From Cycas panzhihuaensis (Eukaryota > Plantae > Cycadophyta), in the NCBI GenBank assembly GCA_023213395.1, contig CM041465.1:146761741-146825740 (forward strand): a stretch of DNA of 64,000 bases, given 5' to 3'. Below are positions 30,525 through 62,360 of the stretch, one piece after another (within the stretch, counting starts at the first letter, position 1; every line of letters starts with the position of its first letter). Both the position numbers and the translations under genes were made by a program. A model generated the notes under the pieces. That model did not search any database. It was not told where the DNA came from and worked only from the letters and a program-made list of their open reading frames with translations.

Positions 30525-30755
30525 GTCGAGCCCTTCAATACGTTGCCTGTACTACTATTTGGGTTGGAAGATAGTACTCCCGCCCCGAGCCTGGCCTAAA
30601 ATGTACCAAGAAGATGATACTCGCAGGGTAATAACAGTGAACCACTTCCACAAGAGTGCAGGGAGAGCTACCTTCTACCTTCTGATCCAGGATGATGAGT
30701 CTCAGCAATTGCCGATACGCTCGACTGGTGTATAAAATCAAATGCTTGGGCTTTC

Positions 30756-30761
30756 TTTATA
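30756..30761 (-). promoter_or_regulatory. Putative TATA box of the EXL gene
   Basis: TATAAA on minus ~230 bp upstream of the ATG; CCAAT at 30861-30865 (minus); no ATG in the intervening leader. Confidence 0.6.
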
Positions 30762-31022
30762 AGCGGGAGGCTCAAAGGCGGAAGCATGTGCTTGCGGATA
30801 GGAAAGAATCCTTGCCAGAAGGCATCCGCAGCAATCCTGGGAACTCGAAACGGATTTTACATTGGTTGGGTGGATAAAAGCTGGACCCCGGGGCTACAGA
30901 CGGTCAATCATGCCGCCGCCTCAACGAAGACGGCTTCCATTATAAGTTCCAGATCACAGAAAGTTGTGGGCCTGCCGGTCAACCAGACCCCGTGTCGCCT
31001 GGTCCTGTAACTCATAATGCTC

Positions 31023-31030
31023 GAATATTC
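31023..31030. promoter_or_regulatory. P1BS (PHR1 site, GNATATNC) next to ABRE-like ACGTGG
   Basis: GAATATTC inside palindrome CGAATATTCG, ~500 bp upstream of the EXL ATG; TTACGTGG follows at ~31036. Confidence 0.45.
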
Positions 31031-32605
31031 GGGGGTTACGTGGAGCGCTGCTTACCTGGCGTCGGACCAATCTCTGGCTGTGTTGGACGGGCTGGAGTTA
31101 ATTGTATTGATTGTTTGGAAGCTATTGCCACGAGATAAAAACTAAAACGAGAAACTTGCCCGTGCCTGCCAGTAGTGCAGTGCAATGAATGGAGAGTCCG
31201 GAGAATTCAGAGATCCAATCCAGCTGGGATCTGCCACCGTGTTCTTGGGCCCACTCCGTAGTGGATTGTTGGGAAGGTCTTTTGTAGCCACTTTCAAAAC
31301 TGGGTGGCCGCCTACAGCTGCTCTGCGGGCCTACCCCATTCCTCTCAAGGGAAGGTGTCAAAGTTTCAAACCTCCTAAGGTCACCTTTCAATGCCACTTT
31401 TACTCTAAACGGATTTGGTTGGGAGGGTAACGTCGACCACGTTAAGGGGATGGGATTCAGGAGGCTTTTGGGTAGAGAGCTCGTCGAATCTGCACCGCAG
31501 ACACACCAAAAACAAAAGGACGGTTCATTTCCGGCAACCTGAATTATCGAATATATAAAATATTGCCGCCATTAAGTCCTTTGTCATGTGAAAGATAGAT
31601 TGATCGATTCGAGATCGCAACTTGTAATACGGCTTAGTCCTAGACTTGGATTGGCTTGTATGGAAAATCTGATTGCGGTACCTCCCCGGTACTGGGCCAG
31701 ATCTCTTTTGTAGCCTGGGAAGAACCGCAAGATAACAGAAGACTAATGACCTGCCGACAGCTTGGGTTGCCGTCATTTTATCGATATATGTGTACAAATA
31801 TGCATTGTACAACTTTACAGCTGCATTCGGTAAAATAATGGAGAGTCTTTAGGGCACGTTTTTGTTTTGTTTTTTTATCATAAATTCGATCGTCAGTTTT
31901 GGAATCGTCAATCCAGGCTTCGTGGATTGCATATTGCAGGAAATTTCATGGATCACCAATAATATGGTTTTCATGAAAGTCAACATAACCACATATGTGA
32001 GTTTGTCTTCAACCCAAGTTTGAAATAGTTAAGCATTAAGGACCGAAGGTTAAGATTGCTTACAATAAACAAATTGTCATTGAACGGATCATTTTGACAC
32101 ATGCATAGATTGTTAATATTTAAATTATTTTTTTATATCAATTTCAACTCTCTTTCATCCAATCGTATAGTACTAATATATCTACAAATCTCTATATATA
32201 TCTCACAATTAATAATAATATGTAATGAGCACTACACTGATTCCTAATGTTATTGTTGCTATTTATTAAAGTAGCTATATATTACGTGGTTGTAATTTTT
32301 GTGAGGTATGTTTTCTAAGGAATAAGTTTAAGAAATAGCCTCTTCATATCTTTATCTCTACTAATAGTGAACCATATATTAGTTGACAACTTAAATTTTG
32401 ACGGTCATTTAATTATTTATACAAATCTTATAACTTTTAGCATTTTTCACAATGTTGCATTGAATGAATCCATGTTGTCACATGTATATCTCTTCATGAC
32501 AAAATAGTAATATAAATTAAGAATGCTTATAAATATACAGCATTAAAATTAATATGAATGTTACGGTCCCCACAACTTAAGGATGCTATAATCTAGTATA
32601 TTAAT

Positions 32606-41730: not shown

Positions 41731-44666
41731 TGACACTCTTTTTCTTTCCCCTACCTTTCCTTTTTCTTTGCTTTTCATAAAATGATAAACATACCAAATG
41801 AAGAAAGGTAATGAGAATGTAACTAAGAGGAAATAAAGGGGAAAAAGTAAGGGATCCTTTCCAATGTGAAAACCCTTACTTTCAACTTTTTTTACAAAAA
41901 AAAAGAGAGACTAACTTCCCTTTTATAAGTTAATTTCTTCCTACTTTTCCTTATGGCTAAAATACTTTCTATCTCCCTTATTTTCTCTTTTAATAATGAA
42001 GTAACTTGAAAAAGAACAAAGGGGGCAAGGAGTTTCTATAAGAGGGAATAAGGTAAGAATGTTAATAAGAAACAAAATAACAATAAGGAATTTGGAGGAA
42101 GTGCATCTAGATTTAATTAATGGTTGGAGGCATCTTTCCCCGTCCTTCCTTCAGATGCTCCTATTATAAAATGCCAAAAGTAACAAACATGAAATAGGAG
42201 GGGAGAAAGGCACCTTAGAATGGCACAACCTCCCCTATGTAAGTGGTTTCCCTAGTTGTAATAAGGAAAACCTCTACAACAAACCATACAACTTAGTGGA
42301 TGTATGCACAAATGGGAAGGAGGGATCATACAAATTCTTACCCTGCCTTCTACAATCAAAGCAAAAAGAAACTACCAATTCGTATAACTCTACCTATGCA
42401 ACTTCGTGAAAGAGCATGGAAGGAAAGAGTGAAATGAGTCTCATAATCAAGAAACCATTGGCACATTTGAACCAAGATCACCAATGGAGGGATATTCGTC
42501 AAATTGGGCATATCACTCATATGCTTTTGATTCCTATCCTAAAAAATCATATCCTCTTCAAGATCCTACCCAAGAGGGCGAGGACCCTATTTACTGCCTA
42601 GGTGATTAGACACATCTGAATTTTTGCCCCTACCCTATGTAGGGTGTAAGGGGACACTTCCCTATGGACCACTCTCATTTTGATGAGAGAGCCCATGATG
42701 ACCGTCTTTCGAGTTCTGCTTAATATGAGCCCTCTACCTCATATGAGCAAGCTTAAACTCCTCCTAGTGATGTAGTAGAGGCATTGAGGAAATGTTTCAA
42801 AGCCATGAGTACCCAACCACCTCTAAAGTGTTTAGAGCGCTTCCTTTAGAGCATTACTTCACCTTCTTCCATCTCCATTCCACTTGCATTGTCCCAATCT
42901 ATGTCCTCTTTGGCAACGGGACCTATTCTTATAGCCCCTCCACCCATGAGTGATCCCTTGACCCAAGGGATGCCCCATGGGATGTTAATTACATAAATAG
43001 GTTTAAGCATACCTCCCCCTACCCAATCAATGGTGTCACAATCAATTGTGGCCCATGCCCATTTAATTCAACCCTGAGTCCCTTCACAATCCCACGCTTC
43101 AGGTTATGGAGGATCCATCCCCATTCACCCTTGTCCATAACACATGGACTCTTTGCTCTACGTACCCCTAGGTTACATATCCTAGCCTTGGGCGCATTGA
43201 GTGATAAACCCTCTTTTATCCTATGGGGTAGATCCACTCCATCCCTATGGGGTTACACCCTATGTATGTGAACCCTATGGGCAAAACCTCGTCCCTTACC
43301 CTACACCATCTTCTATATGTATAACTTCGTACACGGAGCCTTTGTAAGAGGGATCTACTCCCCCTCCTATCTCACATCCCTATGTGACATCATCTTAGGG
43401 TACATATCCATGGATTTCTATTACACATGCAAGGTGATATCCTCTCACCCAACTTCTTATGTGGTATACCCCCAAATGAGGGTAGCCCCTTCTTGTCAAA
43501 TAAGTGGGGACCCTTATGCTTCTTACACTTATCCTTCCTATCCCCCAAACAATGGGAGTGGGTATTCATACCTATCTCCCTCTACTTCTTAAGTTGATTT
43601 ATTAACTCAACCTAGGATCCATCCTTTCATTGATTATCGATCAACTCCCTTATCCATCGAGGCTCTCAGGACCAACCTGTCACCTCATCCTTTTGAAGTG
43701 CCTAAGTTTGATGATACTTCCTTGCAAGACCTGACCAAGCATGTTAGAGGCTTTTCCATAGCATGTATCGATTATTGGGCTTATGACCAAATTTTAATAG
43801 AATTACTTCCAAGATCCTTATAGGGAGATGCATTGAAATGGTTCTACCATCTCCCTACCCATTCTATCTTTACCTTCTAGTAGTTAGTTGATGAATTTGT
43901 CAACTACTTTAATGTAGCCCAACCCTTCAAAAGTGAGGTCAAGGCTCTCTTATCATTGAAACAAGGTCACGATGAACTCAATCATGACTTTGTGAGACAT
44001 CTCTATGATCTCCTTCACTCCTCCAAGGCCACCTTGCCTAAGGAATTTGTTAGGAATATTAATGTTATCTTTATGTCACATGTCAATATTATAAATTTAA
44101 GTTATTAAAGTTAATTTTATAAAGTTAATATTTGATAATTATTAATTATGTAAGCTCATTGAAATGAGTGACTACACATTCCAACGAACCTCTTACTCCT
44201 TAAAAATATCTTCCTAGAACTTAGGAGGTTGACTGAAGGAGGTTTTACCTAGTGTAGGTTGGTTGGGTTAATATTCTAAATATGTATTGTATATATCAAT
44301 GAGTTAATATAGCATTAGATTTAGAGGTGGTTTTTCTTCCCCAGAAGGGGTTTTTCACCTGCCACATCATGTGTATCTGTGCAATGTCTTTTTGTTATTG
44401 TTCTGTGCTTTGCATTTTATCCTAATGTTGCATATGATACCTATTTCAACATGGTGTTAGGGTTGCCTCTCTATCTACATGTTGTTGTAACTATAGGGTA
44501 TGCAAGAACCATAGGTTATCTTCCAACACCTCCAAGGCATTTCTTATAGTATTCAAATTCCTAGTCTCTACAAACTTATCTGCTTTTTGTATGAAATCAC
44601 CACATTGTATTGTAGGATCACCATTCTAAATGTGTTGGTGTTGTTGTTGTTACCGTTTCTATCCAG

Positions 44667-45047
44667 AAATGGGAATATGCAAATGTCTTCCAGCGTTCTA
44701 ATCTTACGAATTCTGGTAATGCCGTTATTAAAAACAACCAAGAAATGGTCATTGCTAACTTCCATGCATTCAACGATAATTCCAACTACCATCTCCTCTT
44801 TAACCCTGAAGTCAATCACGTAGGTCTCGAGATCAAACATGGAAAGCTTCAAATGAGTCGCCATTAATAACAAGCCGTCACCACCGATCTGGACACGGCC
44901 GATGCATTCTACTTATTCTATGAGCAAATGCCATCCCCTCAGAGCGTTAGGTTCTGTTATACCTCCAGCATTAAACAACAATTCTTCCGTCACGGTGTTC
45001 CATATGTGGCAAGCGTGACACAGAATCCCTGCGTATAATCTCCTCAC
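44667..45047 (-). pseudogene. SAP: Captured fragment of STERILE APETALA (F-box/WD40-like, C-terminal half)
   Basis: One frame with one stop (44913-44915): LYAGILCHACHIWNTVTEELLFNAGGITEPNALRGWHLLIE*VECIGRVQIGGDGLLLMATHLKLSMFDLETYVIDFRVKEEMVVGIIVECMEVSNDHFLVVFNNGITRIRKIRTLEDICIF. Colinear with recalled SAP LFAGVPGRAFHIWD..EE..FVGG.LTDPEAVMGWH.LTE....GR.R..DLRN..GLIV..DA.......G.ASVRRV.T...CEF. Confidence 0.8.
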
Positions 45048-45184
45048 TCTTCATTTCAATGTTTAGAGACTTTTTTTTTTCTCCCCTTCCATCTACTTTC
45101 TTGCTTGCAAACAAAAATAGGGTCCTATCAAGGCGATCACATCCAAGCTGAGATTTTAAACAAAACCCAATTGGCCCTTTGTCA

Positions 45185-45437
45185 CGTGGTATGGTGACCT
45201 ACGGTATATAGAGTGTAGGAAACATTGTCATGGAGGTCAGAAACATTGCCAAGGAAATCACTGGGGTTTGAAAACAAGTAAGCATTGACCATGATCCCAA
45301 ACAATGCTCGATGCCATCCCCAACATCACTACCACATGTAATGCAGAGGGATTTTACCAGAGGGAAGAACCAGATGCCAAGGCAACAACGATTGAGAAGA
45401 AAGACAAAGCTATCGTCCAACGCCATCCCAACGCCAT
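45185..45437 (-). pseudogene. Captured 5' fragment of a secreted/receptor protein gene (possibly malectin-like CrRLK1L kinase)
   Basis: MALGWRWTIALSFFSIVVALASGSSL (signal peptide), then across frameshifts LCITCGSDVGDGIEHCLGSW and AYLFSNPSDFLGNVSDLHDNVSYTLYT. Confidence 0.4.
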
Positions 45438-46430
45438 CGTCGATCAAGTTGAATTAAAGCCGAAGAATGGAGAATGAGTGAATGAAATTCCATCGTCGCC
45501 ACCATTCGAAGAACCCGCAACTAAGATAGGGTTTCATCCTTAAGATAAACCCAAAAACCAAATAAATTTCATCCTAAAGTTTTTGCAAACACAAAAAATA
45601 CTCCAACTTAATTTATTAATCATTCGGGTCTGTGCATCGCTCCCCGCCCCTACTCCCCCACTTTTTTTTTTTTTATAATATTGATTGAAGCAAAATTAAT
45701 CACCCCCTTGCCTTTAGTTAAATCAAAACATTAGTTTTTTAAATATTCTCAAAAAAATTATTTATGCAACTAATTTACAACACTTGATTTCATTCAATAA
45801 TCACTCTATTTAAATTTTCCTTTTTGTTATTAAAAGATAATTAAAGGGTAATCATCACTATAAAAATTAGGCTAAATAACCCCTTTCACTACTCTTAAAT
45901 GAAATCATTAATTATATAATCCATTATAAGGTGGTTTTGATAATTGGAGCATTAAATGCCCTAATCATAAGCTTGAAAAGTATTAACACTTGTCTTTAAT
46001 CTTTTTCATTTATAACTTGTAACTTGTTTAAATTAAATTTTCTCTCATTTATCCTTTTAAGTCCTTTCTTTATCACTAGTCAACTTTATACAAATCAATG
46101 CTATGTCTCTTTACTTAATTAATAAATAAAGTTATAATAATAATAACTTTTTTCTAGAAAAGGGAGTATTTATCTTTTTTTTTCTCTAAAGGGAAGGTAT
46201 CTAAATAAAATATCTCAAATAATAGTAATGATTTCAAGCTCTCTTATTTTTTAAAACTAAAATTACCATAAATATTTGATAAAATATATTTATTAATTAT
46301 TAATGGTAAATTAAAAGGATTGCTCTAATGTTTAGTGTTTTTTCTTATGACTTATTCACCTACATTTTATACCAAACATATTCAATTTTTTCTCTAAAAA
46401 GATTTCTAAACGTCATTCCTAATTCCCAAT

Positions 46431-49400
46431 ATGACACTTATGCTAGGAATAATCACTTGTATACCAATTCCAATTTTAAATGGCTCAAATTATGTCGACT
46501 AGAAAAATCGAATATCCCATCAACTTAAACGACAAAAGATATGACGATATGTTACAAATGAATTTACAAAACCAAAAGATGAAAAATCAAAAAGCTATAT
46601 GGAGTCCTAGGCACTATCTTATCGTCTCTTTCACTAGACATTAGTCAACAATTCTCTGATTCAGACGGTCTTGCCATTATCTAGAATACTCTCAAGGAAA
46701 AGTACGATAAGGTCGACTCTCAGCAATTGGCTATCTTAGAACAACAATTGTATGATCTCAATTATGATGACTTTTCCAAAGTCAAATATTTCTTATCAAA
46801 AATTTAATTTATCAATAAAGAATTAGGAAATTATATTAAATCTTCAATAAAAGTAAGTGATAAAGAAGAAAAAGTTGCACATGCCAAAGATGACGATACA
46901 CTCATCTGTCTAGCAATAAACAAACTTTTGAAGCATTTTAATCTCTTCAAGACTGCTAGACAGCAAGATGGTAATCCACCAGTAACCTTCAATCAGCAAA
47001 CAAATCAATTGATAGAACACCAAATAATGTTGATTCAAACCAGAAAATTAAAAGATCTTTCTCAAGCTTTCTTTTCAAAATCAAAGACACAAAATGAAAC
47101 TAAACATCAAAATAATTATAATAGTAATCCTAAGTTTAAGAAACCTCACAGAGGTCCACCAACTACTTCTCAAAATAATACTACGTATTTTAGACCACCA
47201 AAATACCAAAATACCTCTAAACAGTCTGTTTTAAAATGGAACACTGTAAATCCTTCACAGAACATTAGTTGTGCTTATTGCCATAAAAAATGACACACTA
47301 TTGATGTCCGTAGAAATAGAATAGCTTTAGAAGCTTAGAAAGCTTCTAAGGGAATTCAATCACAACCCCAATCTCACAATCATTCTTTAACTGATATAAT
47401 ATCTGCTTTTATTGCTCTATCTAGTTTATCACCACAATGGATTCTTGACTCTGGTCCTTCCTATCACATGATAGAACACTAGGAGTATTTAACCACTTAT
47501 CAATCTGATTCTAACTCTAAAGAAGATATTTCTTTTGGGAGTAGATCTCAACTCAAAGTGAAAGGATCATGTGATGTCACTCTAAAAGATGGTTCAATCA
47601 AGGACATATTCTACGTTCTTGGTTTATTACCAAATCTTCTTTCTGTTTATCAAATTTTCCAGAAAAACCTTGTTTCCAAATTCTGGAAAGATAAATTTGT
47701 TATTAAAGAACCTTTAAATAAATTCAAATCAATTGCCTTTGGACCTGTTGACTACAAAATAGGTCTCTATGACCTAACTAGTGTACAACATACTAAAACA
47801 AACTCTTTTAGTGCCTTTATAGCTAAATCTGACCCAGTCAGTAAATTATGGCATGTACAGTTTGGCCATACTAGCTATGGCAAACTTCAATATTTAAAAA
47901 GGCATAATATGGTTCATGGTCTTCCCCCCTAACCACTATCTATGGTGTTTGCAAAGCCTACAGAATAGGTAAGCAACACATGGATCCCTTTCCACATCAA
48001 ACTTAATTTAGAGTGAAAGTTCCACTTGAACTTATTCACTCTGATATATGTGAACCATTCCAAGTATTTTCATACTCTAGAAGTCATTATTTCATCACAT
48101 TCATTGATGAATTTTCAAGAAAATATTAGGTGTACACACTCAAGACTAGAAATCAAGTGTTTGACATCTTTGTTAAATTCAAAACACTTGTTGAAAAGTA
48201 ATCTAACTCAAAAATTAAAATTTTTAGATCAAACAATACTAAAGAATACTTAAGTAGCAAGTTTACTTCTTTTTGTGAAAAACACAGAATTTGATTTCAG
48301 TATTCCGTTACTTATACTCCTCAACAAAACTATGTTACTGAATGTAAAAACCATACTCTCGTCAAAATGACATGATGCATACTACATGCAAAGAGTCTTG
48401 ATTTAAAGTTATAGGTAGAAGAAATTGCTTGATCTAACTATCTCCTAAATCAGCTACCTAGTAAGTCTTTACAGAATGTTACGCCAGAATAGAAATAGTT
48501 TAGTTGTAAACCCTCAGTTAAACATCTTAGAATCTTTGGAAGTATTGCTTTGGGACACATTCCTAAAGAAAAATGTAAGAAACTAGATCCTAAAAGTTTA
48601 AAATACATCTTCGTTGGCTACAACGAAGAAAGCAAAGCCTATAGACTTCTAGATCCAATCACGCATAAGATCTCAATCTTACGTGATGTAATATTTGATG
48701 AAGAAGGATCCACATCAAATTCTACTCATAGAACTTCCCATTGAAAATTTGTTAACCAACACTTATTTGGTTAACCCTTCAGAAAAATAAGTTGACTATG
48801 AAATGATAGTCCTTATCTATGCAAGTCAAGAATTGGACTCTATTTAAAGCAACTATTATAGATCCTTCCTCCCAACCTGTTTCTTTAGATCAACCAATTA
48901 CTACAGAAACTTCAACAAACAAATAACCTATATAGGCAAAGAAAACTCTCTCTGATGTTGGATCTGATGTAGGTAATCCTTTAGATACTAGGAGAACATG
49001 TTCTCAAAAACTATAAACTAATTATGTACTAATGGCCAAAATAATGGCCAATGATGATCCTAAAATATTTAAACAAGCTAGTAATAATCCCATATAGTAG
49101 TAAGCCATACAAGTTGAAATAGATGCTTTAAAAAAGAATTCAACTTGGAATCTTGTTACTCTACTACCAAGAAAGAATCTAGTTGGCTGTAAATAGGTAT
49201 ATCAAACTAAGTTTAATTCAAAAGGAGCTGTTGAAAAATATAAAGCTCGCTTAGTTACAAAAGGTTCTCACAAATTGATAGTATTGATTATAATAAAACC
49301 TTCACCCATGTCACTAAAATGAATACTATCAAAACTGTTATCACTCTAGCAGCTAAATTTAGTTGGGAAATCCATCAAATAGATGTTAAGAGCACATTTT

Positions 49401-50593
49401 TAAATGGTGATCTCAAAGAAGAAATCTATATGACTTAACCTCCTGGCTTTATTGACAATCCTAACTTGGTTTGCAAGTTAAAGAAATCAATCTACGGGTT
49501 GAAACAAGCTCCTCGAGCTTGGTACATAAAAGTAGATGATTATCTTACTCAAAATGGATATGCTAGATGTATTAGTGACCCTAATCTTTACTTTAAACAT
49601 GAAAATAATAACATTACTATATTAATTCTATATGTTGATGATATCATTATCACAAGAACCTCCACCATCAATATTCATCAACTAAAATTGGCCTTGATGA
49701 ATAAATTTGAAATGACTGATTTAGGTCTTTTACATTATTTCCTCATATTACAAATTTATCAAACTGATTCAAAAATAACAATATCCCAACCTAAATATTT
49801 CTTAAACTTAATCAAAAGGTTTAACATGAAAAATGCTAAACCCGCACCTAATCCTTTATAATCAGGAGTTGAGTTATCTACTAATTGTTCTACACCACTT
49901 TGTGATTCGATATTATATAGGCAACTCATTGGAAGTCTAATTTATTTAACCCATACTCAACCCAATATCTCCTACGTTGCTCTATGTTCTAGATATATGT
50001 AAAAACTGCATAAGTCACATTGGAAAGTCGCCAAACAAATTCTCATATATCTTCAAGATACTGTTTTTTAAGGCTTAACTTATAATTTTTGTAATAATAC
50101 TTTAAAATTAATAGGATATACTAATTTAGACTGGTAAGAGACTCTGATGATAAAAAATCAATAGTTGGTTATGTTTTTTTCTTAGATTCCTCACCTATTA
50201 CTTGGTCTAGTAAAAAGATGTAGGCTCTAGAATTATCATCAACATAAACTGAATATCGAGCACTTGTTGAAGCTAGTAAAGAAACATTGTGGATCAAATC
50301 TCTTTTAAGTGAACTTGGTTTGTTTTCTAACTCTTCTATTAAACTTAAAGTTTATAATCAAGGTGTTATTGTTATTGCTACTAATCCTGTTGCTCATTCA
50401 AGAACTAAGCATAGAATTACATCAATATTTTATATGTAATCTTGTTACTGATGATATTATTCATTTATCTTATTGTCCTACTAATCTACAAGTTGTTGAC
50501 ATTCTTACCAAATAATTGACAGAAGTGAAGTTTTTAAAACTATGAGATTTATTGAAGATAAAAGAAGCCTCCATTAAAGGGGGATCAACATGA
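46431..50593 (+). pseudogene. Copia gag-pol pseudogene
   Basis: IPILNGSNYVD*K; CAYCHKK*H; WILDSGPSYHM; LWHVQFGH; LIHSDICEP; KLDPKSLKYIFVGY; KLKKSIYGLKQAPRAW; LYVDDII; QVVDILTK. Confidence 0.93.
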
Positions 50594-53500
50594 TGAAGAT
50601 CTTTTTTATCTTCTATATTATACAAAAGCTAACATTAAAAGGGGATGTTAGGAATATTAATGTAACCTTTATGTCACATGTCAATATTATAAATTTAAGT
50701 TACTAAGTCAGTTTTATAAAGTTAATATTTAATAATTGTTAATTATGCAAGTTCGTTGAAATGAGCAACTACCCATTCCAACGAACCTCTTACTCCTTAA
50801 AAAGCTCTTCTTAGAATCTAGGAGGTTGACTGAAGGAGGTTTTACCTGGTGTAGGTTAGTTGGGTTAATATTCTAAATTTGTATTGTATATATCAACGAG
50901 TTAATATAGCATTAGATTTAGAGGTGGTTTTTCTTCCCCATAAGGGGTTTTCCACCTGCCACATCATGTGTATCTATGCAATGTCCTTTTGTTACCGTTT
51001 TATTCTTTGCATTTGATCCTAATATTACATGTGATACCTCTTTCAACATAATTGAAGAGAGATATATTTGTTAATGCTCTTCACCCTGAAGTCCACGTGG
51101 AAGTCCTCAAAATGGGGGTGATGACATGTGACTCTACCATAGCCAAGTGTTTGGCATTAGAGGCCATTGAGATCTAGTTAGGTCTTAAGAAGCCTCATTG
51201 AAAATCATAGCATTGTAAGAAAAACCCTCCTCTGTGTGACCAAAAGTTCCAACAACAACCTCTAAGGTCTTCTACTAGTATAATTAAGAGGACCTTGGAT
51301 CCCTTAACCTTAGTCATATATTCTTTCGAATGTATGATCAAAGAACTGAAACTTTAGACTTCTCAACCTAAACCTCTCAAACAATGCCACTTAAGTGTGG
51401 GAACACCCAAACTTCCTAAGGAAGGAAGGTGAGACCTCCTTCTGAGAAGAAGTGATGTTCTGTGCATGGGGAGTGCCTCTATGAGGACTTACAATATTGA
51501 TCAAAATATCTTGAGCTTGCACCACATTGTGACACCTCTCCCAAGAGGGATTCTAAGCCCAATTTAGATTAGCATGTTTATAGGATCCTTTCTCAAACCA
51601 TGGGAAATAGGACCAACATATCTAAAATAGGAAGGCAAGGAATAAAGGACAATCTCCTAACCTTTTTTCTAATTAAGTAAAGTGAAAGGGCTGAAGAGAT
51701 TCGTCTTCTTTACCTAGTCTTAGGTCCCAACATCCTTCATCTTCTCAACCCAAAAACAAATGGAAGAGAGTCATCTAAATGCTTAACACCACTGCCTTGT
51801 ACCTTTTTGCAAGATCCCAAGCTACAAAGGAGGCTGATAAAGCCTCCACCTTATAACAAATTCCTTCCATAGACAATCTACCTACAAAAATCTCTATGGT
51901 CTCCAAGACCATTCCCATCTACCCTAGATGCTATGATTTTTGAAGAGCACTCCCCCAACCTATAGGGAAGGGGAAAGCCTTTTTTATTATCAAAGAGATC
52001 CACACGTGGTTGCTGGCATATCTATAATGGACATCCTATGAAGTTGCCTTGAGCAACGAGCCCTTCTCCTGGAAGCCCTAACTCAAAAGGATGTCCCCAT
52101 CCATTTTGTTAGTACCACTTCAAATGGGGTACCTGTCATCACATTTGACCCTAGAGACCTCCCTCTTACAGTGAAAGGGAACACCAATAGCATTACCCTT
52201 TCACTATCACTATAGATACCCTAGATTGCACCATAAAAAGGATTGTTATGGATAATGGTTCTTTGGTTAATTCCATGCCTATATATATGGTAGAAAAGCT
52301 GGGGATAGAGTCCCTCGAATAGGTCCCATGGAGGTGCCAAGGCTATGATGGTAGTGAGAAGGCATCCTTGTGGATGATGATGTTTCTCCTTACCTTAGAA
52401 GATAAAATCATCCAAATGAACATTATAGTCCTTGACATAGATGTGGACTACAACCTTTTGTTAGGACGTCCATGGCTTAACTAAATGGGAGTCATTTCCT
52501 CCTCTAGCTAGGGGCAACTAAAATTTTCCCATGAAGGGAAAATGAAAGTTATCATTCATGAGCCTCCCCCTAGTTGACCACCTCACCAACACTACTAAGC
52601 AATCTTTAGGATGATGAGGTTGAGGATCCGTCCAACCCATCGATTGCTCATCCTATTGATGATTAAGACTATCGAGAAGAAAGGGAATCACATCCCTCTC
52701 ATGTGAACTTGATTCACTTTGCCTCTAATACTATTTAGAGCTATGGATACCTAGTCATCTTGAGTGATCAACAGTCATATGACAATGACGAGGAACCTCC
52801 CCACCCAATATCCCTCCTTAATGTGTGAAGAGGGCATTTACCTTACCCTTTCATATATCTTATGCCTCAGTGTAGGACCCACATCAAGGTAGCTCCCTCT
52901 CTCATTTCATCCTAAGATCAATACGCTATTAGTCCCTTAACATGCGTAGATCCATAACCTACATAATAGCACTCTACTCCCCAATCCTTACCATCCTCCA
53001 TAGATGATGAGGATAAGGAGTGTTTTTTTCCATTAATGAGTCTATTATTTATGACTTGGATCCTAGCTAGCTCTCCTCTCCATAAGATAGGATGTAGCGG
53101 CATAGGGGGTCACGCTCAGACTTCTCTAAAGAGTCCCCTCATTATGTTGATTGGTGGGTTGATTACTACGAGCCCGTCACCCCTCCACCTGCTTCTCAGT
53201 TCTTGCCTAGTAAGATTATCCATGGGATATATTTCTTCAAGAATGACCAAGTCCTATTAGAGCATCTAGTGGGTGCCATGCCTAACTTGCCTTCTAGACA
53301 CCATAAACTTGGTTTTCGGAAGTGTTTGGATATTGGGTTATCACTAGCCAAACTAAACCAATGACCCCTCCCCATCCATTGATTGATAAAGCTCCTTTCC
53401 ATTTTGAGGGAGGAAATACCATGCATGTAGGGGCAATCAAGGACATCACCCTTGCCCCTAGTAAGGTCATCAAGGTTAGGGTAGAGTGCTCTCCCTAAGA

Positions 53501-56500
53501 GATGGGGAAATATACCCAATTATTCAAGGAATTTTGTGATATTTTTGCATGGGATTACTCAGATATGAAGGGTATAGATCCTAGCATTATCACCCATAAT
53601 CTTACCACTATCCTAGGTGCTTACCTCATGTAACAAAAATAATGCTCCTTGCACCTGAAATTATCAACTGTAGTTGAAATAGAAGTAGAAAAATTGCTTG
53701 ACATAGGCCTTATTACTTCCATAGACTACCTTAAATGGATTTCTAACATCGTGCCCATCACCAAAAAGAATAGGATGATTAGGATTTGTGTCAATTTTCG
53801 AGATATTAATAATGCTTCTTCAAAGGACAACTTCCCTCTCCCTTTCATTGATCAAATTATTGATCAAACTGCCGGTTTTAAAGTCATGTCCCTAATTGAT
53901 GACTTCTCTAAATACAACCAAATTCAAATATCCTTTGAAGACCATCATAAGACGGCCTTTACTACTCTATGGGGGATATTTACCTATGAAGTTATGTCCT
54001 TTGGACTGAAGAATGTAGGCGTTACTTACCAAAGGGCCATGTAATTTATATTTCATGACCTTATCAACAAAACTCTTGAGGTTTTTATGGATGATATGAT
54101 AGGTCTCTCATGAAAAAAGGCCAATCATCCCACAGACCTTAGAGCAATCTTTATAAGGTATCATAAATACCATATCAACTTGAACCTGTTGAAATGTATC
54201 TTTGTAGTTATGGTTGGCAAACTTCTAGGGTTCCTTGTTTCTAAACAAGGAATTCAAATAGATCCCAATAAAGTCAAGTCCATCATTGAGATGCCTCCCC
54301 TAAGAACTCAATAATAAATCAAGTTATTCTTGGGAAGGTTAGGGTTCCTAAGATGTTTCTTAGCGAACTTGACCATGAATGCCAAACCCCTAACCAATTT
54401 ATTAAAGAAGTGGGCTCCATTTGTTTGGACTCTTAAGGCCCAAGAAGTATTTTAAAAGCTCAAGTGAGCCCTTATTTTTGCTCTTGTATTAGTTCCCCCT
54501 CTCTTTGATTGTCCCTTCATCTTATACACCTCAATGACTAACAAATCCTTAGATGCCATGCTAGCCTAGGAAGATGACTCTAAAATTGAAAGAGCTATCT
54601 ACTTCATTAGTTATACATTGGTGGTAGTAGAACTAAATTATCTACTAGTTGAAAAGGAGTACTTGGCACTAGTCCACACCACTAAAAATTTAGGCACTAC
54701 CTCCTTGGTAACACTACCTTTGTGATCATCCAATCTAATCCATTGAGATGCATCCTAACCTAGTCAAACTTGATAAGAAAGGCAGGCAAATAGGTTATTC
54801 TCCTTTAAGAATATGATCTTAAAATCATTAACAGAAAATCTAAGAAGGGGATGATAGTTGTAGAACAATTGGAAGACACTCTCATCTCTAATTCTCTTAG
54901 GGTTTTGGTTAACAATTCATTACCTGATGAACCCATCTTAGCTCTCCATCATATACATTCCTATCCATTGGTTAGCAACAAATGGTATGGGGATATAATC
55001 AAATATCTCACTTAACAATAGTATCCCACTGATGCTAGTGATAAAGTAAAATCATATGTCGGGGCTTTTGCTCAAAAATACTTCCTCATGTAAGATGTAT
55101 TGTACAAATGGTCTTTTGACGATGTTCTCCTTCATTGTGTTAATCCTGAGGAGATCAACTAGATCCTCCATGAATACCATAACAACATTTATGGAGACCA
55201 TTTTAGAGGCTAGTTAGTGGCCCAAAGAATCCTTCAAGTGGGGTATTATTGGCCAACCTTGTTCAATGATACCCATGTTTATGTGCAATCTTGTGGTAGA
55301 TGCCAAGAGCATGCCAACATTATTCACCAGCCTTCTAAGTTATTATATACTATCATGTCTCTATGGCCTTTCTCCTAGTGGGGATTAGATTTGATTGGAG
55401 CTATCACTCCACCCTCCTCAGCTTAGCATAAATTTATCTTAACCACAATAAAATACTTCACTAAATGGGCAGAGGCTATTCCCTTATCCTCTACAACTAG
55501 CAAGATGATCGTCACTTTCGTGTATCAACACATCATTTACCAATTCGGGGTTCTAGACTTCCTTATCATAGATAATGGAACTCTATTTTCTAAAAAGGAA
55601 ATGGATGAAATTTGTGAGAAATTCAAGATCTCTCACAAGACCTTATCTCCTTATTATCCTTAGGCCAATGTCCAAATCGAATACTTTAATAAAACCCTAA
55701 TCAACATTCTAAAAAAAATCATTGCTCAATCCCAAAAGGATTGGACATCCAGCTCCACTCGATTTTATGGGCTTACCAAACTTCAATCTGCACCACCATA
55801 GGAATGATGCCATTCTCCCTAGTTTATGAGACGAAGGTAGTTTTGCCTTTAGAAGTCAAAATTCCTTCTTTGAGGGTATCCCTCAAAGAGGTTGTTGATG
55901 AGGAGTGGCATTGCCAGGCCCACCTCCTTGATCTCAAAGCTTTGGATGAGAAACACTTGGCCACATACCAAGCCAACCTAGCATCCAAGGCTAGGGCACA
56001 AAGGATACATAATAAGTTTCTATGTCCTCGCCCCTTAAATCCCAAGGGCCAAGTCCTCAAATTAGAGTATATATATAGCTACTTATCTAAATTTGGCCCC
56101 AAATATGTGGGTCCTTTTATCATCCTTAAGAACCTTGATAATGACACATATAGAGTAGCCATGTTGGAGGGCCTTGAGTTTGACAACGCCATAAATGATA
56201 AATTCCTAAAGAAATTCAATGGTTAACTCTTTCTCCATCTAGGTAGAAAAGGAGTTATCCCCTTTTGCTATGAGATGAGCCTGAACTACCATTCAATTGT
56301 GACGTCGAATACCCTCACTAGGGGCATGGCATGCATTCAAGCTTTATATTAGCCCTACTCATTGACAGGATTAGCTATGTCCCTTTCTGAAGGCATCATA
56401 CCTTCCTTTAACAAGTGGAGCCCCTTCTTCAATTCATGAGTAGTGGTGGATATATCACCATAGGGAGATATTCCCATGCCCATGATTGATCTTTTCTTGA

Positions 56501-57099: not shown

Positions 57100-59082
57100 C
57101 TGCTTCCTAGTCTAAAGACCATACTCCTTCGAGGCTCCTCTTGGATCATCTCAAGGTCTTGACCTTGCTCACCTTATCTCATGCATGACCCTCATCCCTT
57201 GGCCTCTTGTGGGGTGGTGTCACTGTAGCTATGCAAAGAGACCGAGATGCCATCTAGTCTACAAGCTAGTCATACTACACCTAGAGGCAATCTCGCTCCT
57301 CTTAGACTGCCTTTAGCTAGGTCTTTAGGACCATAATCCTTATCTCTACTCTTAGAGCTCCCTAGACCACTCTATCCCCTACTTGAGTCTCCATATCTTA
57401 CACCTAATCTTGTAGCTAGTCCCTCTCTATTTGTAACCAATCTCTCTCTATTTATAGGCAAGCATCCCTTGTTTACCTCTCTTGGGCTTCTGTAACCCAT
57501 ATGTCTTGTACATAGACGATGGGAGCTAACGTGGTTTTATGTGGTCATGTTGACCTTAGCTCCCTACTATCTATTATAGGAGGATGCCCCTCCTCATATA
57601 CCCATGGGAATAGCTCCACTATGGCCCTACTAATCAGCTCTCTAGTAATACCTCCTCTTGCTAACCATGTAAATCCATGTGTAGTGTGGGGTGTGTGAAT
57701 AAAAATTTAAAATAATAAATAATGATAATATCATAATTCTCTCAAGAAGATGAATGTAAGTTAAAGGTATAACTAAAAAGGGGAAGTACTCACCTCCTCA
57801 ATCAACTGGTGCCTCTTGAGCCTCTCCCTCCTCAGCTCCTAAGTTCTCTGCCCCTATAATGACTACAACTATCTCTCCTATCGTAGCTAATATCACATCC
57901 ACCTTTAAGATAATAGGTACCTCACCCTCACTAACATCCTCTCTCAACTTCACTACCAAGTCCCCTATAGTCTCTCCATCCTCCGTATTGCTATCCCAGT
58001 GCATGGTGTAATATAGTCAACTCATATAGTTATCTATCGTGAGCATGTCTAATGTTGTGGTTGCAATTGATCTTCTCACTGGCTCTTCTACACTCCTAAA
58101 TCCTGATGGCCATTGATGGAGGAGAGGATTGCTAGATGATATTGGTTGTGGCCCTACTACTGGTCCTACTCCTTGGAAGTGATAAAAAAACCAATATTAT
58201 AACTGTTGGAGTATCCTGTCAGACCCTCGGGTGTTTCCAACTCATCCTTAATAAGCTATGTAGGTGTCCTCAACCTGGGTCGAGCCTAACATATTTGTGG
58301 GTTGTGGCAGGATCAATTCCACCTAGGTATTTTGGTTTAACGACAACTTCAACATGGTATGAGAGCTAAGGCCAGTATTCGAATCACCTCGAGTTCAGCT
58401 TAGGGGTAGGTGTTAGAGTATCCCGTCGGACCCTCGGGTATTTCCAACTCGTCCTTAACCAGCTCCATGGGTGTCCTCGACCTGGGTTGAGCCTGGCATG
58501 TTTATGGGTTGTGGCTGGATCAATTCCATCTGGGTCTTTTGGTTTAATGGCAACTTCAACAATAACAAGGAGCAGTAAGAGAGTCTTCCACGTTCATTAG
58601 CTTGAATGTGGTCGAGTTAGGCAGTAAGGTTGGCCACTATTAAAGTGGCCCAATTGAATCTCTATCCCACCTCGCACCTCCTCATGATGTCCATCCACCC
58701 TCTAGGGACATCTCTATAGTTCTATTTTTGAGATATCTAGAACATAATAGAAAAATTAATCATCTTCCTTACTCAAGGAATGTTTACTAGTACAATCGTC
58801 TTAAGGGATAGTCCTCTCCTATCCTAGCAGCCCCTACCATAAAAGAATCGGGCCGCCTTCTTATGTGTCACATTGGTGTTGGGTAAAGTCCTCAATATGG
58901 TTAGTCCTCTACTAGTTAGGACCCCCACAATACTTCGTACATCTATTAGGGTAATGGTGACGCCTCCCACTCATAGGAGATGGAAAACATGTCAACAACA
59001 ATCCCAATGTGATATAATATCTATGATAAGGGCCTAATCTCAAGTGTACTACCATAAGCCGATAATCCATTGAAACACTCTC
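57100..59082 (-). pseudogene. Antisense Plant Mobile Domain (MAIN/MAIL-like) gene of the old Tat element
   Basis: DIISHWDCC*HVFHLL*VGGVTITLIDVRSIVGV; RFNWATLIVANL; CSLLLL*YWFFYHF (rejoined across the TRIM); acidic segment; GTGAGT donor at 57793; coiled-coil IERDWLQIERD. Confidence 0.8.
58204..58561 (+). mobile_element. TRIM (terminal-repeat retrotransposon in miniature), 358 bp
   Basis: 151-bp LTRs 58204-58354 and 58411-58561; PBS TGGTATGAGAGC 58355-58366; PPT AGGGGTAGG 58402-58410; perfect TSD ATAAC. Confidence 0.96.
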
Positions 59083-61941
59083 TGCGGGGCGGTGATCCAA
59101 CGCCTAGCGGAAAGGGCATAAAATAATATGCTAAGTAAGCTAGATAGCGAGGATCATACCTCGCAGGACGTCCGTCTTGGAGCGCTGCACGGATCGCAAG
59201 GTGCCTGGTTGCTTCCAGGTAGCCATGCAAAGACGAGGCCTTCCTACCCTTCGGATGGCCGGGAAGGAAAGGGAAACCTCGCGCGTTGCGGCTTCTCAAG
59301 GCAATGAGAAGGCGACGAGGGGGGCAACCAACCTAATGTGTAACGGATGTGAAGTAAAGTGTGGCTAAGGGGTATAACATAAACAGGTCTTCTATTCCTA
59401 TGCTATGCAAAGTAAAGAAATAGCGCGAGGAAGTAAATGTGAAATAAAAGATTGTTTTCCTTTTTCTTTATGTTTCCTTATCTATCACGGTAAATGTAAA
59501 GAGACGGAAAAAAGCGTAAAGGAAATACGACAGAAATGCGAAGAATACATGGATCCGGCGTTCGAGTAGAAGCACCGATTCCCCCTCTAGGTTGCGCTCC
59601 TTTCCTCCTTCCTCCGTGCATGCGACGTCGATCGATAGTGATGAAGGGGGTTTATTTACCTCCCCTTGAGCATGCAAGAACTAGGTAAAATGAAAGGAAG
59701 AAAAGCAGAACTCAAAACAAAAGGGGAGAAATATTGTGCGAGAGTCGACCAGCAATGGGTTGATCTCGCGCACCACTTCCTCCAATGCGATCCTGCGAAC
59801 AAACAGAGAGAATGCCTTCCTCTCAGGAGAGAGGCTACGAAGCACGACAAGGTATATATATATATGGAAACGAAATCAACTAAGCTAAATAACTTGAGTT
59901 ATGCACCAAAACGTAGCAAAAATGAAACAAAGCCGCATGATAAGCATATAAACTGTCATGCACCATAAAGCATACTATATGGGACTGAGTATAGCCTCGG
60001 GATGGCTAACTCACCCATGAGAGGTCTCCACGGGGTTCGGGAAAGCAATGCTAGCAGGCAACAAGGTGAGACAGGTAGTGGCAGGTTACCTACACCAAGA
60101 GGAAGGCTCAAACCAACTCTCTTAGGCTTCCCTAGCTCTGTTTCCTAAGAAAGCGCGGGTGGTAAAGGGAGAGAGGACAAGGGACGGAACCCTTGGGGAG
60201 AAGGACAGCAATGGGGGACGGAACCCCGCCTATCTCCCTCAAATCCTCGTGTGAAACCCTTTATACCGGCTAACTCAAAAAAGGGCGAAAGAGAAAGCTA
60301 AGAGGGAGAGGATGAGTCTTAAGGAAATGTAAGAAAATGTACCCAATCTAGGATAGCGCTATAGCAAGCTACAACTAGCTAAGATTACTTTCATTGAATG
60401 ACAAAGGAAATATCAAAGAAAGTGCATGCAAAAAGGGGAAAAGAGCTTGCAAGTAGAACAATAAAAAGCAAGGAAAAAAGCACCAACAAGAGACAAGAAA
60501 TACCTTGAATGAGAAAGAGCATGTATGCATGCACTTGGCTACTTGGAGCAGCAGCAACAAGCAATGTCTAAGGGCTGGTTTTGAGTGTCTTTTGTAAGAG
60601 AATGGAAGGAGGAAGCTCCATGCAAGTTAGGAGCTAGAAGTTGTCCTTTGGAGTAGTCTCTCTAGTGAAGAAATCCCTTGGAGCTTTGAGTATTTGTGAG
60701 GGAGAGTGGAACTTACGGTGGAGAACCGTAGGGGGCAGCAATGGCCCTGCAACTCTAGTTGGTAGCAGCCCACTTCACCTCTGTTCAACTGCTGTACATG
60801 AAGTTCTTCTATTACTGTATCTTTTCCTTGTCTTTTTGTGAAGAGTTGCTCTTAGAAATCTTGAAAAGTGAGCTCTAGAATGATGCAAATGAGAAGAAAA
60901 AAGGCCTTTATGCCTTAGGCATAGTAAGTGAACGTTGGGGGCATTGGGGCACCTCCAATCGTATGGAGCCACGCGGTAGTTCTGCGAAAAAAACGTGGAC
61001 ACTGTCGTGTGGTTCTTTTTTTTAAATTTCGAACAGTCGTACCGCGGCGAACTCGGTACCGCTACAAACTCCGCGGTACCGCCTAGTTTACCGCGGTATC
61101 AACCCGAAATTTAAAAAAAGAGAAAAACATAACATAAAAATCAGGTTTTTGGGGCAAGGTCAAAGGCTAAGCTTGAAATACATCAATTGGGAGAAGGCCT
61201 AGGCAGTGGGCAAGTACCCAAAACGATGCAAAGAGTCCTAACTAAGGATTAAATCGAACTTAGAAAGGATGGCAACGCAAACGACATGTTGCAGCATGAG
61301 CAAGCAAACTGGCAGAAACGATCCCGGGAAACTGTGGAGACACCATGGGTGGCTGTACGCCATACGGGGCGTAACATTCGCTGAGGAATGCCCCCGCTGT
61401 GAGTCGTCATAGGCTGAGGGGTGCCGTTAGGCACATGCATTATGAGCAGCAACAAACAATGATGCAGGTATATGTCAATCAAACTATTCTAAATTACCTT
61501 AATTAATCATGGGTAAGAAAAGTAAGAACATATACCTGAACAAACCTGTGTCGATGCGTCTCGAGTCCATTCCCAATAGCTGGGAAACACGCCTCGCAAG
61601 AGAGCCTCACTGCTCGGAAGCGTAATGTGATGGCGAATGCTGACAATCAAGAAATATAAGTAGCACATACATATATATATAAAACAATAAAGAGCGGCAC
61701 GTGGACCAAGGGCATAGGCAAGTGTCGTGGCGGAACGCGTAGACAAGGGAGACGGAAACGAGGGCAACGTAGGGGCTGCCTACGCGTCCTCTAATCATTG
61801 ACCTGAAACTGAAATAAGTAGTAACACGAGATGCCCCCGTTGCCAAGGTGCAACGTGAAGTGAGAGGGCATCCAACAAAGTAGAGCAAGCACATCTAACT
61901 AACAGCATTGGAGGTTTGGGCACGGGCCAGCCGGGCAAGTC

Positions 61942-62360
61942 TCAAGGGCGGTCGTCAAGAAGAGGGAGGCGACGCTCAAGGATGAGGCGGACGAGGCTGT
62001 CGGCCTCAGCATTGAGGTGCCTCGGAATATGCTGGATATCCACTGACGAGAAACAAGCCAGGAGAGACCTGGCAGCAGACGCAAGGGTTCTCAAGTGAGG
62101 GCATCGCACCTGGTAAACCTAGGTGAGATGGGACACCACGACCTGAGAATCGCAAAACAACACAATGGAACCGCGATGGAAACGAAGAGCATCAGTAAGG
62201 GCCTCAATAACGGCCATGTACTCGGCTTCGTTATTGGTAGCCTCGGGAAGAAAGACTCCGGAACGTAAGTAGTCATGTCCAGAGGGACTACGAAGAATCC
62301 ACGCAATGGAAGGTCCGGTTGCTGGTGACTTCCACCATCGGTGAAAACGAGGAGAGACAT
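61942..62360 (-). pseudogene. Stand-alone archaeal-type RNase HI (aRH); one frameshift, one stop
   Basis: MSLLVFTDGGS/ATGPSIAWILRSPSG..ATNNEAEYMAVIEALTDA..LFCDSQVVVSHLT*VYQVRCPHL..IQHIPRHLNAEADSL; all four catalytic acidic residues present. Confidence 0.92.

What the first reader, a model, noticed from the sequence alone, without database searches (positions are those of the whole stretch)
44667..45047. Copia retrotransposon carries a captured STERILE APETALA fragment antisense in its 5' leader
Seen: about 127 codons with a single stop, about 200 bp downstream of the PBS, inside an element bounded by LTRs and a TSD, and richer in GC/CpG than the element's gag-pol. Known: SAP/SOD3 is an F-box subunit that degrades PEAPOD/KIX repressors and controls organ size; my recalled SAP sequence aligns colinearly (HIW..EE..F..G..TEP.A..GWH.L.E..GR). 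Inference: the fragment was transduced and replicates with the element, so the LTR-driven RNA would be antisense to SAP mRNA and could give trans-acting small RNAs or methylation cross-talk on a developmental regulator.
Basis: partly seen in the sequence, partly recalled or inferred. Interest (0 to 1): 0.9.

Follow-up and report, generated by a model that had tools for sequence, protein, structure and literature searches.

The report
Old Copia carrying antisense SAP fragment
A decayed Copia retrotransposon carries, backwards in its 5' leader, dead pieces of two host genes (the organ-size regulator STERILE APETALA and a chloroplast dicarboxylate transporter); the call is correct, but this is an ordinary case of gene-fragment capture by plant transposons.

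Summary
The minus strand 45038-44667 (weaker homology to about 44595) encodes an internal part of STERILE APETALA (SAP). It matches Ginkgo Gb_09541 residues 325-448 at 60% identity without gaps (tblastn E 2e-45), with one in-frame TAA.

The fragment lies about 140-210 bp behind a degenerate tRNA-iMet primer-binding site. The host element is a Ty1/Copia element with 404-bp LTRs (K2P 0.096), a polypurine tract and a 4/5 target-site duplication. The fragment is richer in GC and CpG than the backbone.

New here:
- A second antisense host piece at about 45378-45217 comes from chloroplast dicarboxylate transporter 1 (DiT1; E 2.6e-19 against PDB 9mcr).
- Two of the window's eight homopolymer runs of 10 or more bases sit in this leader, on the side expected for poly(A) tails of the captured RNAs.
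- The SAP piece is a decaying pseudogene. It lacks the F-box, keeps 38 of 55 gymnosperm-invariant residues, and its changes are mostly G:C>A:T.

Capture of gene fragments by LTR elements, and the cross-talk model, are already published, including about 400,000 fragments per gymnosperm genome. Unchecked scan notes report similar antisense leader cargo at other loci of this genome.

The parts
44043..44047 (.). left target-site duplication, GAATT
   Evidence: Read from sequence. Matches 4 of 5 bases with TAATT at 51049-51053.
44048..44451 (+). 5' LTR (TG...CA)
   Evidence: 90.9% identical to the 3' LTR. K2P 0.096, 27 transitions and 9 transversions. CpG o/e 0.11.
44453..44465 (+). degenerate primer-binding site, TGGTGTTAGGGTT
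   Evidence: Read from sequence. 9 of 13 bases match the tRNA-iMet PBS TGGTATCAGAGCC, which occurs intact in another element of the window. All mismatches are transitions.
44595..45047 (-). SAP-derived pseudogene fragment, about 150 codons. It corresponds to Ginkgo SAP residues about 321-470 of 531 and has no F-box and no C-terminus.
   Evidence: The core 44667-45038 gives E 2e-45. The tail to about 44595 rests on the uncorrected alignment and the MAFFT alignment.
44913..44915 (-). single in-frame stop (TAA) inside the SAP fragment
   Evidence: The position is conserved in all eight gymnosperm SAPs compared.
45071..45080 (+). T10 run, which reads as A10 on the strand that is sense for the cargo genes. 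It lies between the DiT1-containing segment and the SAP fragment.
   Evidence: One of only 8 homopolymer runs of 10 or more bases in 64 kb.
45217..45378 (-). DiT1-derived fragment (chloroplast dicarboxylate transporter 1, the 2-oxoglutarate/malate translocator), 54 codons
   Evidence: phmmer against PDB: 9mcr_A residues 188-241, E 2.6e-19. Weak Pfam Na_sulph_symp hit. Flanking frames give no DiT1 hit.
45662..45674 (+). T13 run, the longest homopolymer in the window. It reads as A13 on the cargo-sense strand, at the boundary between the AT-rich segment and the GC-richer segment.
   Evidence: composition.
45675..46470 (.). AT-rich remainder of the leader (GC 0.20-0.25). Origin unknown: native leader or further non-coding cargo.
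   Evidence: No protein similarity found.
46470..50620 (+). decayed Copia gag-pol
   Evidence: Pfam gag_pre-integrs (47558-47932), SH3_retrovirus (48550-48744) and RVT_2 (49466-49861). Many stops; the longest ORF is 131 aa. The gag start near 46470 is judged by eye, and Pfam gave nothing on those short pieces.
50637..50645 (+). polypurine tract, AAAAGGGGA
   Evidence: Read from the alignment.
50646..51048 (+). 3' LTR
51049..51053 (.). right target-site duplication, TAATT

Best explanation
This is one old, dead Ty1/Copia insertion (44048-51048). Its unusually long 5' leader of about 2 kb contains a composite cassette of host-derived sequence, all antisense to gag-pol.

Shown:
- The cassette holds an internal, F-box-less part of SAP of about 150 codons and a 54-codon piece of chloroplast DiT1.
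- Both lie inside one LTR pair with a target-site duplication.
- Both are decaying pseudogene pieces.

Inferred:
- The pieces were acquired through RNA. Reverse transcriptase switched onto co-packaged polyadenylated host RNAs while making DNA rightwards from the PBS (plus-strand synthesis). This would explain the antisense orientation, the position just behind the PBS, the stacking of pieces from unlinked genes, and the T runs at the PBS-proximal edge of two segments.
- The cassette was then copied with the element at least until this insertion.

The cargo most likely has no function today. At most it once supplied small RNAs matching SAP, as in the published TE-gene cross-talk model.
For: SAP identity. 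DiT1 identity.

Single bona fide Copia insertion.

Pseudogene state:
- One stop.
- No SAP residues before about 321 or after about 470 anywhere in the window.
- Only 38 of 55 gymnosperm-invariant positions are kept, against 84-100% in leave-one-out controls.
- 11 of 15 single-step changes are G:C>A:T transitions.
- The terminal branch is 0.67, against a median of 0.22, inside the gymnosperm SAP clade.

Decay predating this insertion:
- Post-insertion decay (half of K2P 0.096) predicts about 10% of residues changed, while 31% are changed at invariant positions. Binomial P is 1e-5, or 0.004 if 6% lineage change is allowed.

No sign of a separate insertion event: no TIRs, no Helitron-like hairpin, and no flanking direct repeat of 7 bp or more.

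RNA origin:
- T10 and T13 are two of only 8 runs of 10 or more bases in the window. Both fall in this 2-kb leader, on the strand and side expected for poly(A) tails.

Precedent:
- Bs1 and LTR-mediated retroposition give partial, multi-gene chimeras (PMC5131818; PMC13317346).
- Maize Sirevirus captures show no orientation bias, and 15% carry two or more fragments.
- TEs carry about 400,000 gene fragments per gymnosperm genome (PMC13477047).
Against: - No second copy of the element or cargo could be examined, so propagation with the family is unproven.
- The excess decay could instead reflect an unsampled, divergent host lineage or an already dead donor. P rises to 0.15 if 14% lineage change is allowed.
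- CpG o/e of 0.95 in the cargo is high for DNA that has supposedly sat in a methylated transposon for a long time.
- There are no frameshifts in about 150 codons despite an estimated 15% divergence.
- The DiT1 piece is exon-sized with non-coding flanks. That fits genomic DNA or unspliced RNA better than mature mRNA.
- The SAP segment has no T run at its PBS-proximal end.
- The plus-strand switching mechanism is my inference. I found no paper describing it.
Confidence: 0.65

Rival explanations
1. Later, copy-specific insertion. After this Copia integrated, one or more polyadenylated RNA-derived or other DNA pieces were inserted into its leader. Possible routes are LINE-mediated retroposition, cDNA or filler capture at a double-strand break, or a Helitron carrying gene fragments. 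The cargo then never travelled with the element.
For: - The poly(A)-like runs on the cargo-sense strand also fit LINE-type retroposition.
- The high CpG content of the cargo relative to the backbone fits a younger arrival.
- No second copy lies in the window.
Against: - No cargo-specific TSD of 7 bp or more, no TIRs and no 3' hairpin.
- The SAP piece has no poly(A) run at its 3' end.
- The cargo appears more decayed than the time since LTR divergence allows.
- Three co-oriented pieces would need three hits in 2 kb, or a pre-made chimera.
Confidence: 0.25
2. The LTR-driven transcript is antisense to SAP mRNA and acts in trans, through 21-24-nt small RNAs or RNA-directed DNA methylation, on the host SAP gene, so the cargo modulates a developmental regulator.
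For: - The orientation is antisense and the homology is real.
- Cross-talk siRNAs and raised donor-exon methylation are documented for TE-captured fragments in maize and gymnosperms.
Against: - No expression, sRNA or methylation data could be obtained.
- The element is old, with degenerate LTRs and PBS and a broken gag-pol.
- The cargo has probably diverged about 10-15% or more from its donor. Muyle et al. note that cross-talk decays with divergence.
- The published data show that important syntenic donor genes keep their expression.
Confidence: 0.06
3. The minus-strand frame is a conserved accessory ORF of this Copia lineage (a domesticated SAP-like protein), not a pseudogene.
For: The frame is remarkably free of frameshifts over about 150 codons. 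Antisense accessory ORFs exist in plant LTR elements.
Against: - There is an in-frame stop at a conserved position.
- 31% of invariant residues are lost, with a deamination-type spectrum.
- It has no start context, no F-box and no C-terminal blades.
- No related short proteins exist in 5.8 billion sequences.
- Known antisense accessory ORFs lie between pol and the 3' LTR and lack host homologues.
Confidence: 0.02

Closest known systems
Maize Bs1 and 'LTR-mediated retroposition' (Elrouby and Bureau 2001/2010; Tan et al. 2016, PMC5131818)
   Same: Partial host-gene sequences from two or more unlinked genes sit between the LTRs of one LTR retrotransposon. The acquisition is presumed to be RNA-templated, by reverse-transcriptase template switching. 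The chimera can be copied onward as a pseudo-element.
   Different: In those cases, and in the standard minus-strand switching model, the captured sequence has the same sense as the element and usually replaces internal ORF sequence. Here both pieces are antisense, lie in the leader just behind the PBS, and gag-pol is retained. Junction microsimilarity could not be checked because no donor DNA was available.
Gene-fragment capture by maize Sirevirus (Copia) elements and the epigenetic-conflict model (Muyle et al., bioRxiv 10.1101/777037); capture in gymnosperm genomes (PMC13477047)
   Same: A Copia element carries exon fragments. A minority of such elements carry two or more fragments. There is no sense bias. 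Capture is extremely common in gymnosperm genomes.
   Different: Those studies rest on siRNA, methylation and donor-gene data, and none was available here. They do not describe a PBS-adjacent position or poly(A)-side homopolymer runs.
Antisense accessory ORFs of plant LTR retrotransposons (Grande gene23, RIRE2, Retand; PMC7264820)
   Same: An extra reading frame antisense to gag-pol inside an LTR element.
   Different: Those ORFs lie between pol and the 3' LTR, are conserved across copies and have no host-gene homologue. Here the frames are clear host-gene pseudofragments in the 5' leader.
Pack-MULE and Helitron gene-fragment carriers
   Same: Mosaic of fragments from unlinked host genes, with a potential source of cross-talk siRNAs.
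   Different: No TIRs, no Helitron termini or hairpin, and no separate TSD were found. The carrier here is a Copia element with LTRs, PBS and PPT.

Membership tests
Ty1/Copia LTR retrotransposon | Two direct LTRs ending TG...CA, flanked by a 5-bp target-site duplication | tested here: met
   LTRs at 44048-44451 and 50646-51048, 90.9% identical. Flanks GAATT and TAATT match 4 of 5.
Ty1/Copia LTR retrotransposon | PBS next to the 5' LTR and polypurine tract next to the 3' LTR | tested here: met
   TGGTGTTAGGGTT at 44453 matches 9 of 13 bases of the tRNA-iMet PBS, and all mismatches are transitions. AAAAGGGGA at 50637-50645.
Ty1/Copia LTR retrotransposon | Domain order gag - integrase - reverse transcriptase (RVT_2) | tested here: met
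   gag_pre-integrs at 47558-47932, SH3_retrovirus (integrase end) at 48550-48744, and RVT_2 at 49466-49861 with E 1.8e-29.
STERILE APETALA (SAP) gene family | Significant, colinear sequence similarity to proteins named SAP | tested here: met
   E 2e-45 to Ginkgo Gb_09541 and E 3e-33 to Cryptomeria XP_059076802.1. The alignment is colinear with 8 gymnosperm SAPs, and an ML tree places the fragment inside the gymnosperm SAP clade.
STERILE APETALA (SAP) gene family | Complete protein with N-terminal F-box and full C-terminal repeat region in an open frame (a functional member) | tested here: not met
   Only residues about 321-470 of 531 are present. No match to the N-terminal 320 or the last 60 residues exists anywhere in the window. 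There is an in-frame TAA. It is a fragment and pseudogene, not a SAP gene.
Retrotransposon gene transduction / LTR-mediated retroposition | Host-gene sequence located between the LTRs of a single element | tested here: met
   SAP at 44595-45047 and DiT1 at 45217-45378 lie inside the LTR pair that shares a TSD.
Retrotransposon gene transduction / LTR-mediated retroposition | Cargo shared by several family copies at independent sites (it has been retrotransposed with the element) | not testable with these tools
There is only an indirect age argument.
Retrotransposon gene transduction / LTR-mediated retroposition | Same-sense orientation and microsimilarity at junctions, as expected for switching during minus-strand synthesis | tested here: not met
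   Both fragments are antisense to gag-pol. Microsimilarity could not be tested without donor DNA.
TE-gene epigenetic cross-talk (Muyle model) | 21-24-nt siRNAs mapping to both cargo and donor, with raised methylation of the captured part of the donor | not testable with these tools
   No reads, sRNA or methylation data were available, and the donor locus is not in the window.

The most novel reading that the evidence does not exclude
The arrangement is antisense, directly behind the PBS, made of stacked pieces from unlinked genes, with T runs at the PBS-proximal edge of segments. It may be the signature of a distinct capture route. In this route reverse transcriptase switches onto co-packaged poly(A)+ host RNAs during plus-strand DNA synthesis, just after the second strand transfer. 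The route may operate recurrently in a Copia lineage of this genome. Unchecked scan notes list many other Copia leaders in this genome with antisense host fragments next to the PBS. I found no description of such a route in the papers I read, which report same-sense transduction or no orientation bias.
Probability: 0.2. Interest if true: 0.6.

Novelty: new member of a known kind. Interest (0 to 1): 0.27.

Why it matters
As a single locus it matters little. It is one more dead gene fragment inside a dead retrotransposon, in a type of genome where such captures number in the hundreds of thousands. It should be masked, so that it is not annotated as a SAP or DiT1 gene or pseudogene family member. 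If the position and orientation pattern proves systematic across this genome, it would point to a specific, so far undescribed step of reverse transcription at which host RNAs are captured. It would also give a large natural data set for testing how antisense cargo affects transposon silencing and donor genes.

Tried and rejected
- Pfam on the two SAP pieces gave only sub-threshold noise: DUF1719 and Zn_ribbon_LapB.
- The search for homologous proteins with the 114-aa piece found nothing in its 63-200 aa length range. This says nothing about longer relatives.
- The ESM Atlas search on the DiT1-containing ORF gave no usable hit.
- I searched for signs of a nested transposon around the cargo. 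There were no long TIRs, no GC-rich hairpin, and no flanking direct repeat of 7 bp or more above chance.
- PDB searches with four frames flanking the DiT1 piece gave no further DiT1 or other host homology.
- The bacterial-type promoter and terminator scan is uninformative for a plant element. A TATATA/G-box/CCAAT cluster near 45170-45215 overlaps the DiT1-containing reading frame, so I do not claim it as a promoter.
- Pfam on short frames around 46410-46999 did not confirm the gag start.
- I checked a second LTR element (14.5-19.0 kb) for similar cargo. Its 189-aa ORF has no Pfam, PDB or Atlas hit.
- A chance ORF is rejected on the E-values.

Full report
**What is there**

Read on the minus strand, the frame from 45050 down to 44571 stays open for 160 codons, apart from one TAA at 44913-44915.

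I searched the 114-residue piece below the stop with phmmer against 1.84 billion cluster representatives. It returned three proteins only. The best is annotated 'transcriptional regulator STERILE APETALA' of Cryptomeria japonica, XP_059076802.1 (E 6.8e-19).

Back-searching the window with tblastn gave the following:

| Query | SAP residues | Window | Identity | E-value |
|---|---|---|---|---|
| Cryptomeria XP_059076802.1 | 238-363 | 45038-44667 | 52% | 3e-33 |
| Ginkgo Gb_09541 | 325-448 | 45038-44667 | 60.5%, no gaps | 2e-45 |

- About 130 further proteins named SAP by their sources also match this stretch.
- Without composition correction, and in a MAFFT alignment, the colinear match continues through the poly-Asn region to about 44595. 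That corresponds to Ginkgo residue about 470 of 531.
- Nothing in the window matches SAP residues 1-320, which include the F-box, or the last 60 residues.
- The stretch is therefore an internal SAP fragment, not a gene.

**The carrier**

- Direct repeats at 44048-44451 and 50646-51048 are 90.9% identical, with K2P 0.096 and 27 transitions to 9 transversions. They begin TG and end CA.
- The flanks are GAATT on the left and TAATT on the right, a 5-bp duplication with one mismatch.
- The 5' LTR is followed by TGGTGTTAGGGTT. This is the tRNA-iMet primer-binding site with four transition mismatches. The intact motif TGGTATCAGAGCC occurs in another element of the window.
- The 3' LTR is preceded by the polypurine tract AAAAGGGGA.
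- Pfam finds gag_pre-integrs, the integrase-end SH3 domain and RVT_2 in that order, which is the Copia order.
- All ORFs are short, 131 aa or less.
- By eye, gag begins near 46470, so the leader is about 2 kb, which is unusually long. Pfam could not confirm this start.
- The SAP fragment begins 142-214 bp behind the PBS and is antisense to gag-pol.

**Composition**

| Region | GC | CpG observed/expected |
|---|---|---|
| SAP stretch 44661-45050 | 0.43 | 0.95 |
| gag-pol | 0.31 | 0.27 |
| LTRs | - | 0.11 and 0.40 |
| Window median (95th percentile) | - | 0.22 (0.89) |

**A second captured piece**

The neighbouring GC-richer block contains an 84-codon minus-strand frame at 45202-45453.
- Its residues 26-79 (about 45378-45217) match chloroplast dicarboxylate transporter 1 (DiT1), PDB 9mcr_A residues 188-241, with E 2.6e-19. 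Pfam gave a weak Na_sulph_symp hit.
- Four flanking frames gave no further hit, so this piece is exon-sized with non-coding flanks.
- The cargo is therefore a chimera of at least two unlinked host genes, both antisense. This agrees with scan note s1-819594.

**State of the SAP fragment**

- At the 55 aligned positions that are invariant in eight gymnosperm SAPs, the fragment keeps 38. In leave-one-out controls each real SAP keeps 84-100%.
- Of the 15 differences reachable by one base change, 11 are G:C>A:T transitions. This is the spectrum expected for silenced, methylated DNA.
- In an ML tree the fragment falls inside the gymnosperm SAP clade. Its terminal branch is 0.67, against a median of 0.22.
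- It is a decaying pseudogene fragment.
- The host is probably a gymnosperm that is not represented, or only distantly represented, among the SAPs retrieved. I could not name it.

**Age argument**

- Half the LTR divergence (about 0.048 per site) predicts about 10% of residues changed since insertion (simulation). At invariant positions 31% are changed.
- The binomial P is 1e-5. It is 0.004 if a further 6% of lineage-specific change is allowed, and 0.15 if 14% is allowed.
- This modestly favours decay that began before this insertion, meaning the cargo was already travelling with the element. It does not prove it.

Two observations pull the other way and remain unexplained:
- The cargo keeps a high CpG content.
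- It has no frameshift in about 150 codons.

One stop is compatible with 10-15% divergence (P 0.4-0.6).

**Was the cargo inserted later?**

- I found no long inverted repeats around it, no Helitron-like hairpin, and no flanking direct repeat of 7 bp or more above chance.
- The window holds no second copy of the element or cargo.
- The decisive test is counting family copies with and without the cassette.

- The window has only eight homopolymer runs of 10 or more bases. Two of them lie in this 2-kb leader: T10 at 45071-45080 and T13 at 45662-45674, the longest in the window.
- Both are T on the plus strand, which is poly(A) on the strand that is sense for the cargo genes. Each sits at the PBS-proximal edge of a segment.
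- The Poisson probability of two or more such runs in 2 kb is 0.026, or about 0.007 with the strand requirement.

This is what one expects if DNA synthesis moving rightwards from the PBS copied poly(A)+ RNAs starting at their tails. That would be plus-strand synthesis after the second strand transfer, with switches onto co-packaged host RNAs. The model also explains the antisense orientation and the position next to the PBS.

The model is my inference.
- The standard minus-strand switching model (PMC5131818) predicts same-sense cargo.
- The SAP segment itself lacks a T run.
- The same runs would also fit LINE-type retroposition into the leader.

**Known context**

- SAP is the F-box protein that targets PEAPOD and KIX8/9 for degradation (PMC8836299).
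- Capture of gene fragments by LTR retrotransposons is long known, from maize Bs1 and from rice and sorghum surveys (PMC7264820; PMC3726574; PMC13317346).
- In maize Sirevirus (Copia) elements, 3% carry fragments, 15% of those carry two or more, and there is no orientation bias. The siRNA and methylation cross-talk idea is the published 'epigenetic conflict' model (bioRxiv 10.1101/777037).
- A 2026 study reports about 400,000 TE-captured coding fragments per gymnosperm genome, with Copia examples and donor-exon hypermethylation (PMC13477047).

**Leads from the scan**

These are unchecked first-reader notes from the same genome, and I count them as leads only.
- Many notes describe different host fragments (enkurin-like, HIG1, hnRNP U-like, F-box/kelch-like, VPS13 with an inositol transporter) 'captured antisense' in Copia leaders, several 'directly behind the PBS'.
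- If verified, they would make the position and orientation pattern systematic, and that is the only part with real novelty potential.
- I could not read those loci.

**Verdict**

- The identification as an antisense SAP fragment inside a Copia element is correct.
- The cargo is chimeric (SAP plus DiT1) and dead.
- Propagation with the family is plausible but unproven.
- A regulatory effect on SAP is untested and unlikely for this old copy.

Noticed in passing
window 29523-30524 (-), and 30700-31800: An intact 333-aa ORF matches Pfam Phi_1/EXORDIUM (PF04674, E 3.9e-112). A CpG-rich stretch (o/e 0.9-1.1, GC up to 0.53) lies just upstream of it. This is probably a real, unmethylated host gene with its promoter.
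   Followed up: partly
window 14541-14802 and 18731-18992: A second LTR pair (92% identical, 4.2 kb apart) belongs to a minus-oriented element. It has a perfect tRNA-iMet PBS (TGGTATCAGAGCC on the minus strand, next to about 18720). Its 189-aa ORF (17379-17948, minus strand) has no Pfam, PDB or Atlas hit. It is nested inside older repeat pairs at 12181/21423 (83%) and 2292/22248 (82%).
   Followed up: partly
window 45071-45080 and 45662-45674: T10 and T13 runs, two of only eight homopolymers of 10 or more bases in 64 kb. They lie at the PBS-proximal edges of cargo segments and read as poly(A) on the cargo-sense strand.
   Followed up: partly
window 45170-45215: CCAAT, CACGTG (G-box) and TATATA lie within 45 bp, about 160 bp upstream (in the minus sense) of the SAP fragment. 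The cluster overlaps the end of the DiT1-containing frame. Other scan notes mention an 'antisense promoter-like module' in similar cassettes. I did not test this and do not claim it.
   Followed up: no
window 53649-56226 and 58900-63000: Gypsy-type domains are present: RVT_1 at 53649-54044 and a weak, below-cutoff Tf2-1 SH3 hit at 55741-56226. There is also a minus-strand RNase H / RVT_3 ORF at 62119-62589, inside a long CpG-rich block (o/e about 1.0-1.3). Other scan notes cover this region (s1-819538, s1-819648).
   Followed up: no
protein P0002 (188 aa, Logan contig of about 1.4 kb): A SAP C-terminal half begins with Met at a non-native internal position (equivalent to Ginkgo residue about 345) on a short assembled contig of unknown species. 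It could be a partial transcript or another truncated SAP copy.
   Followed up: no
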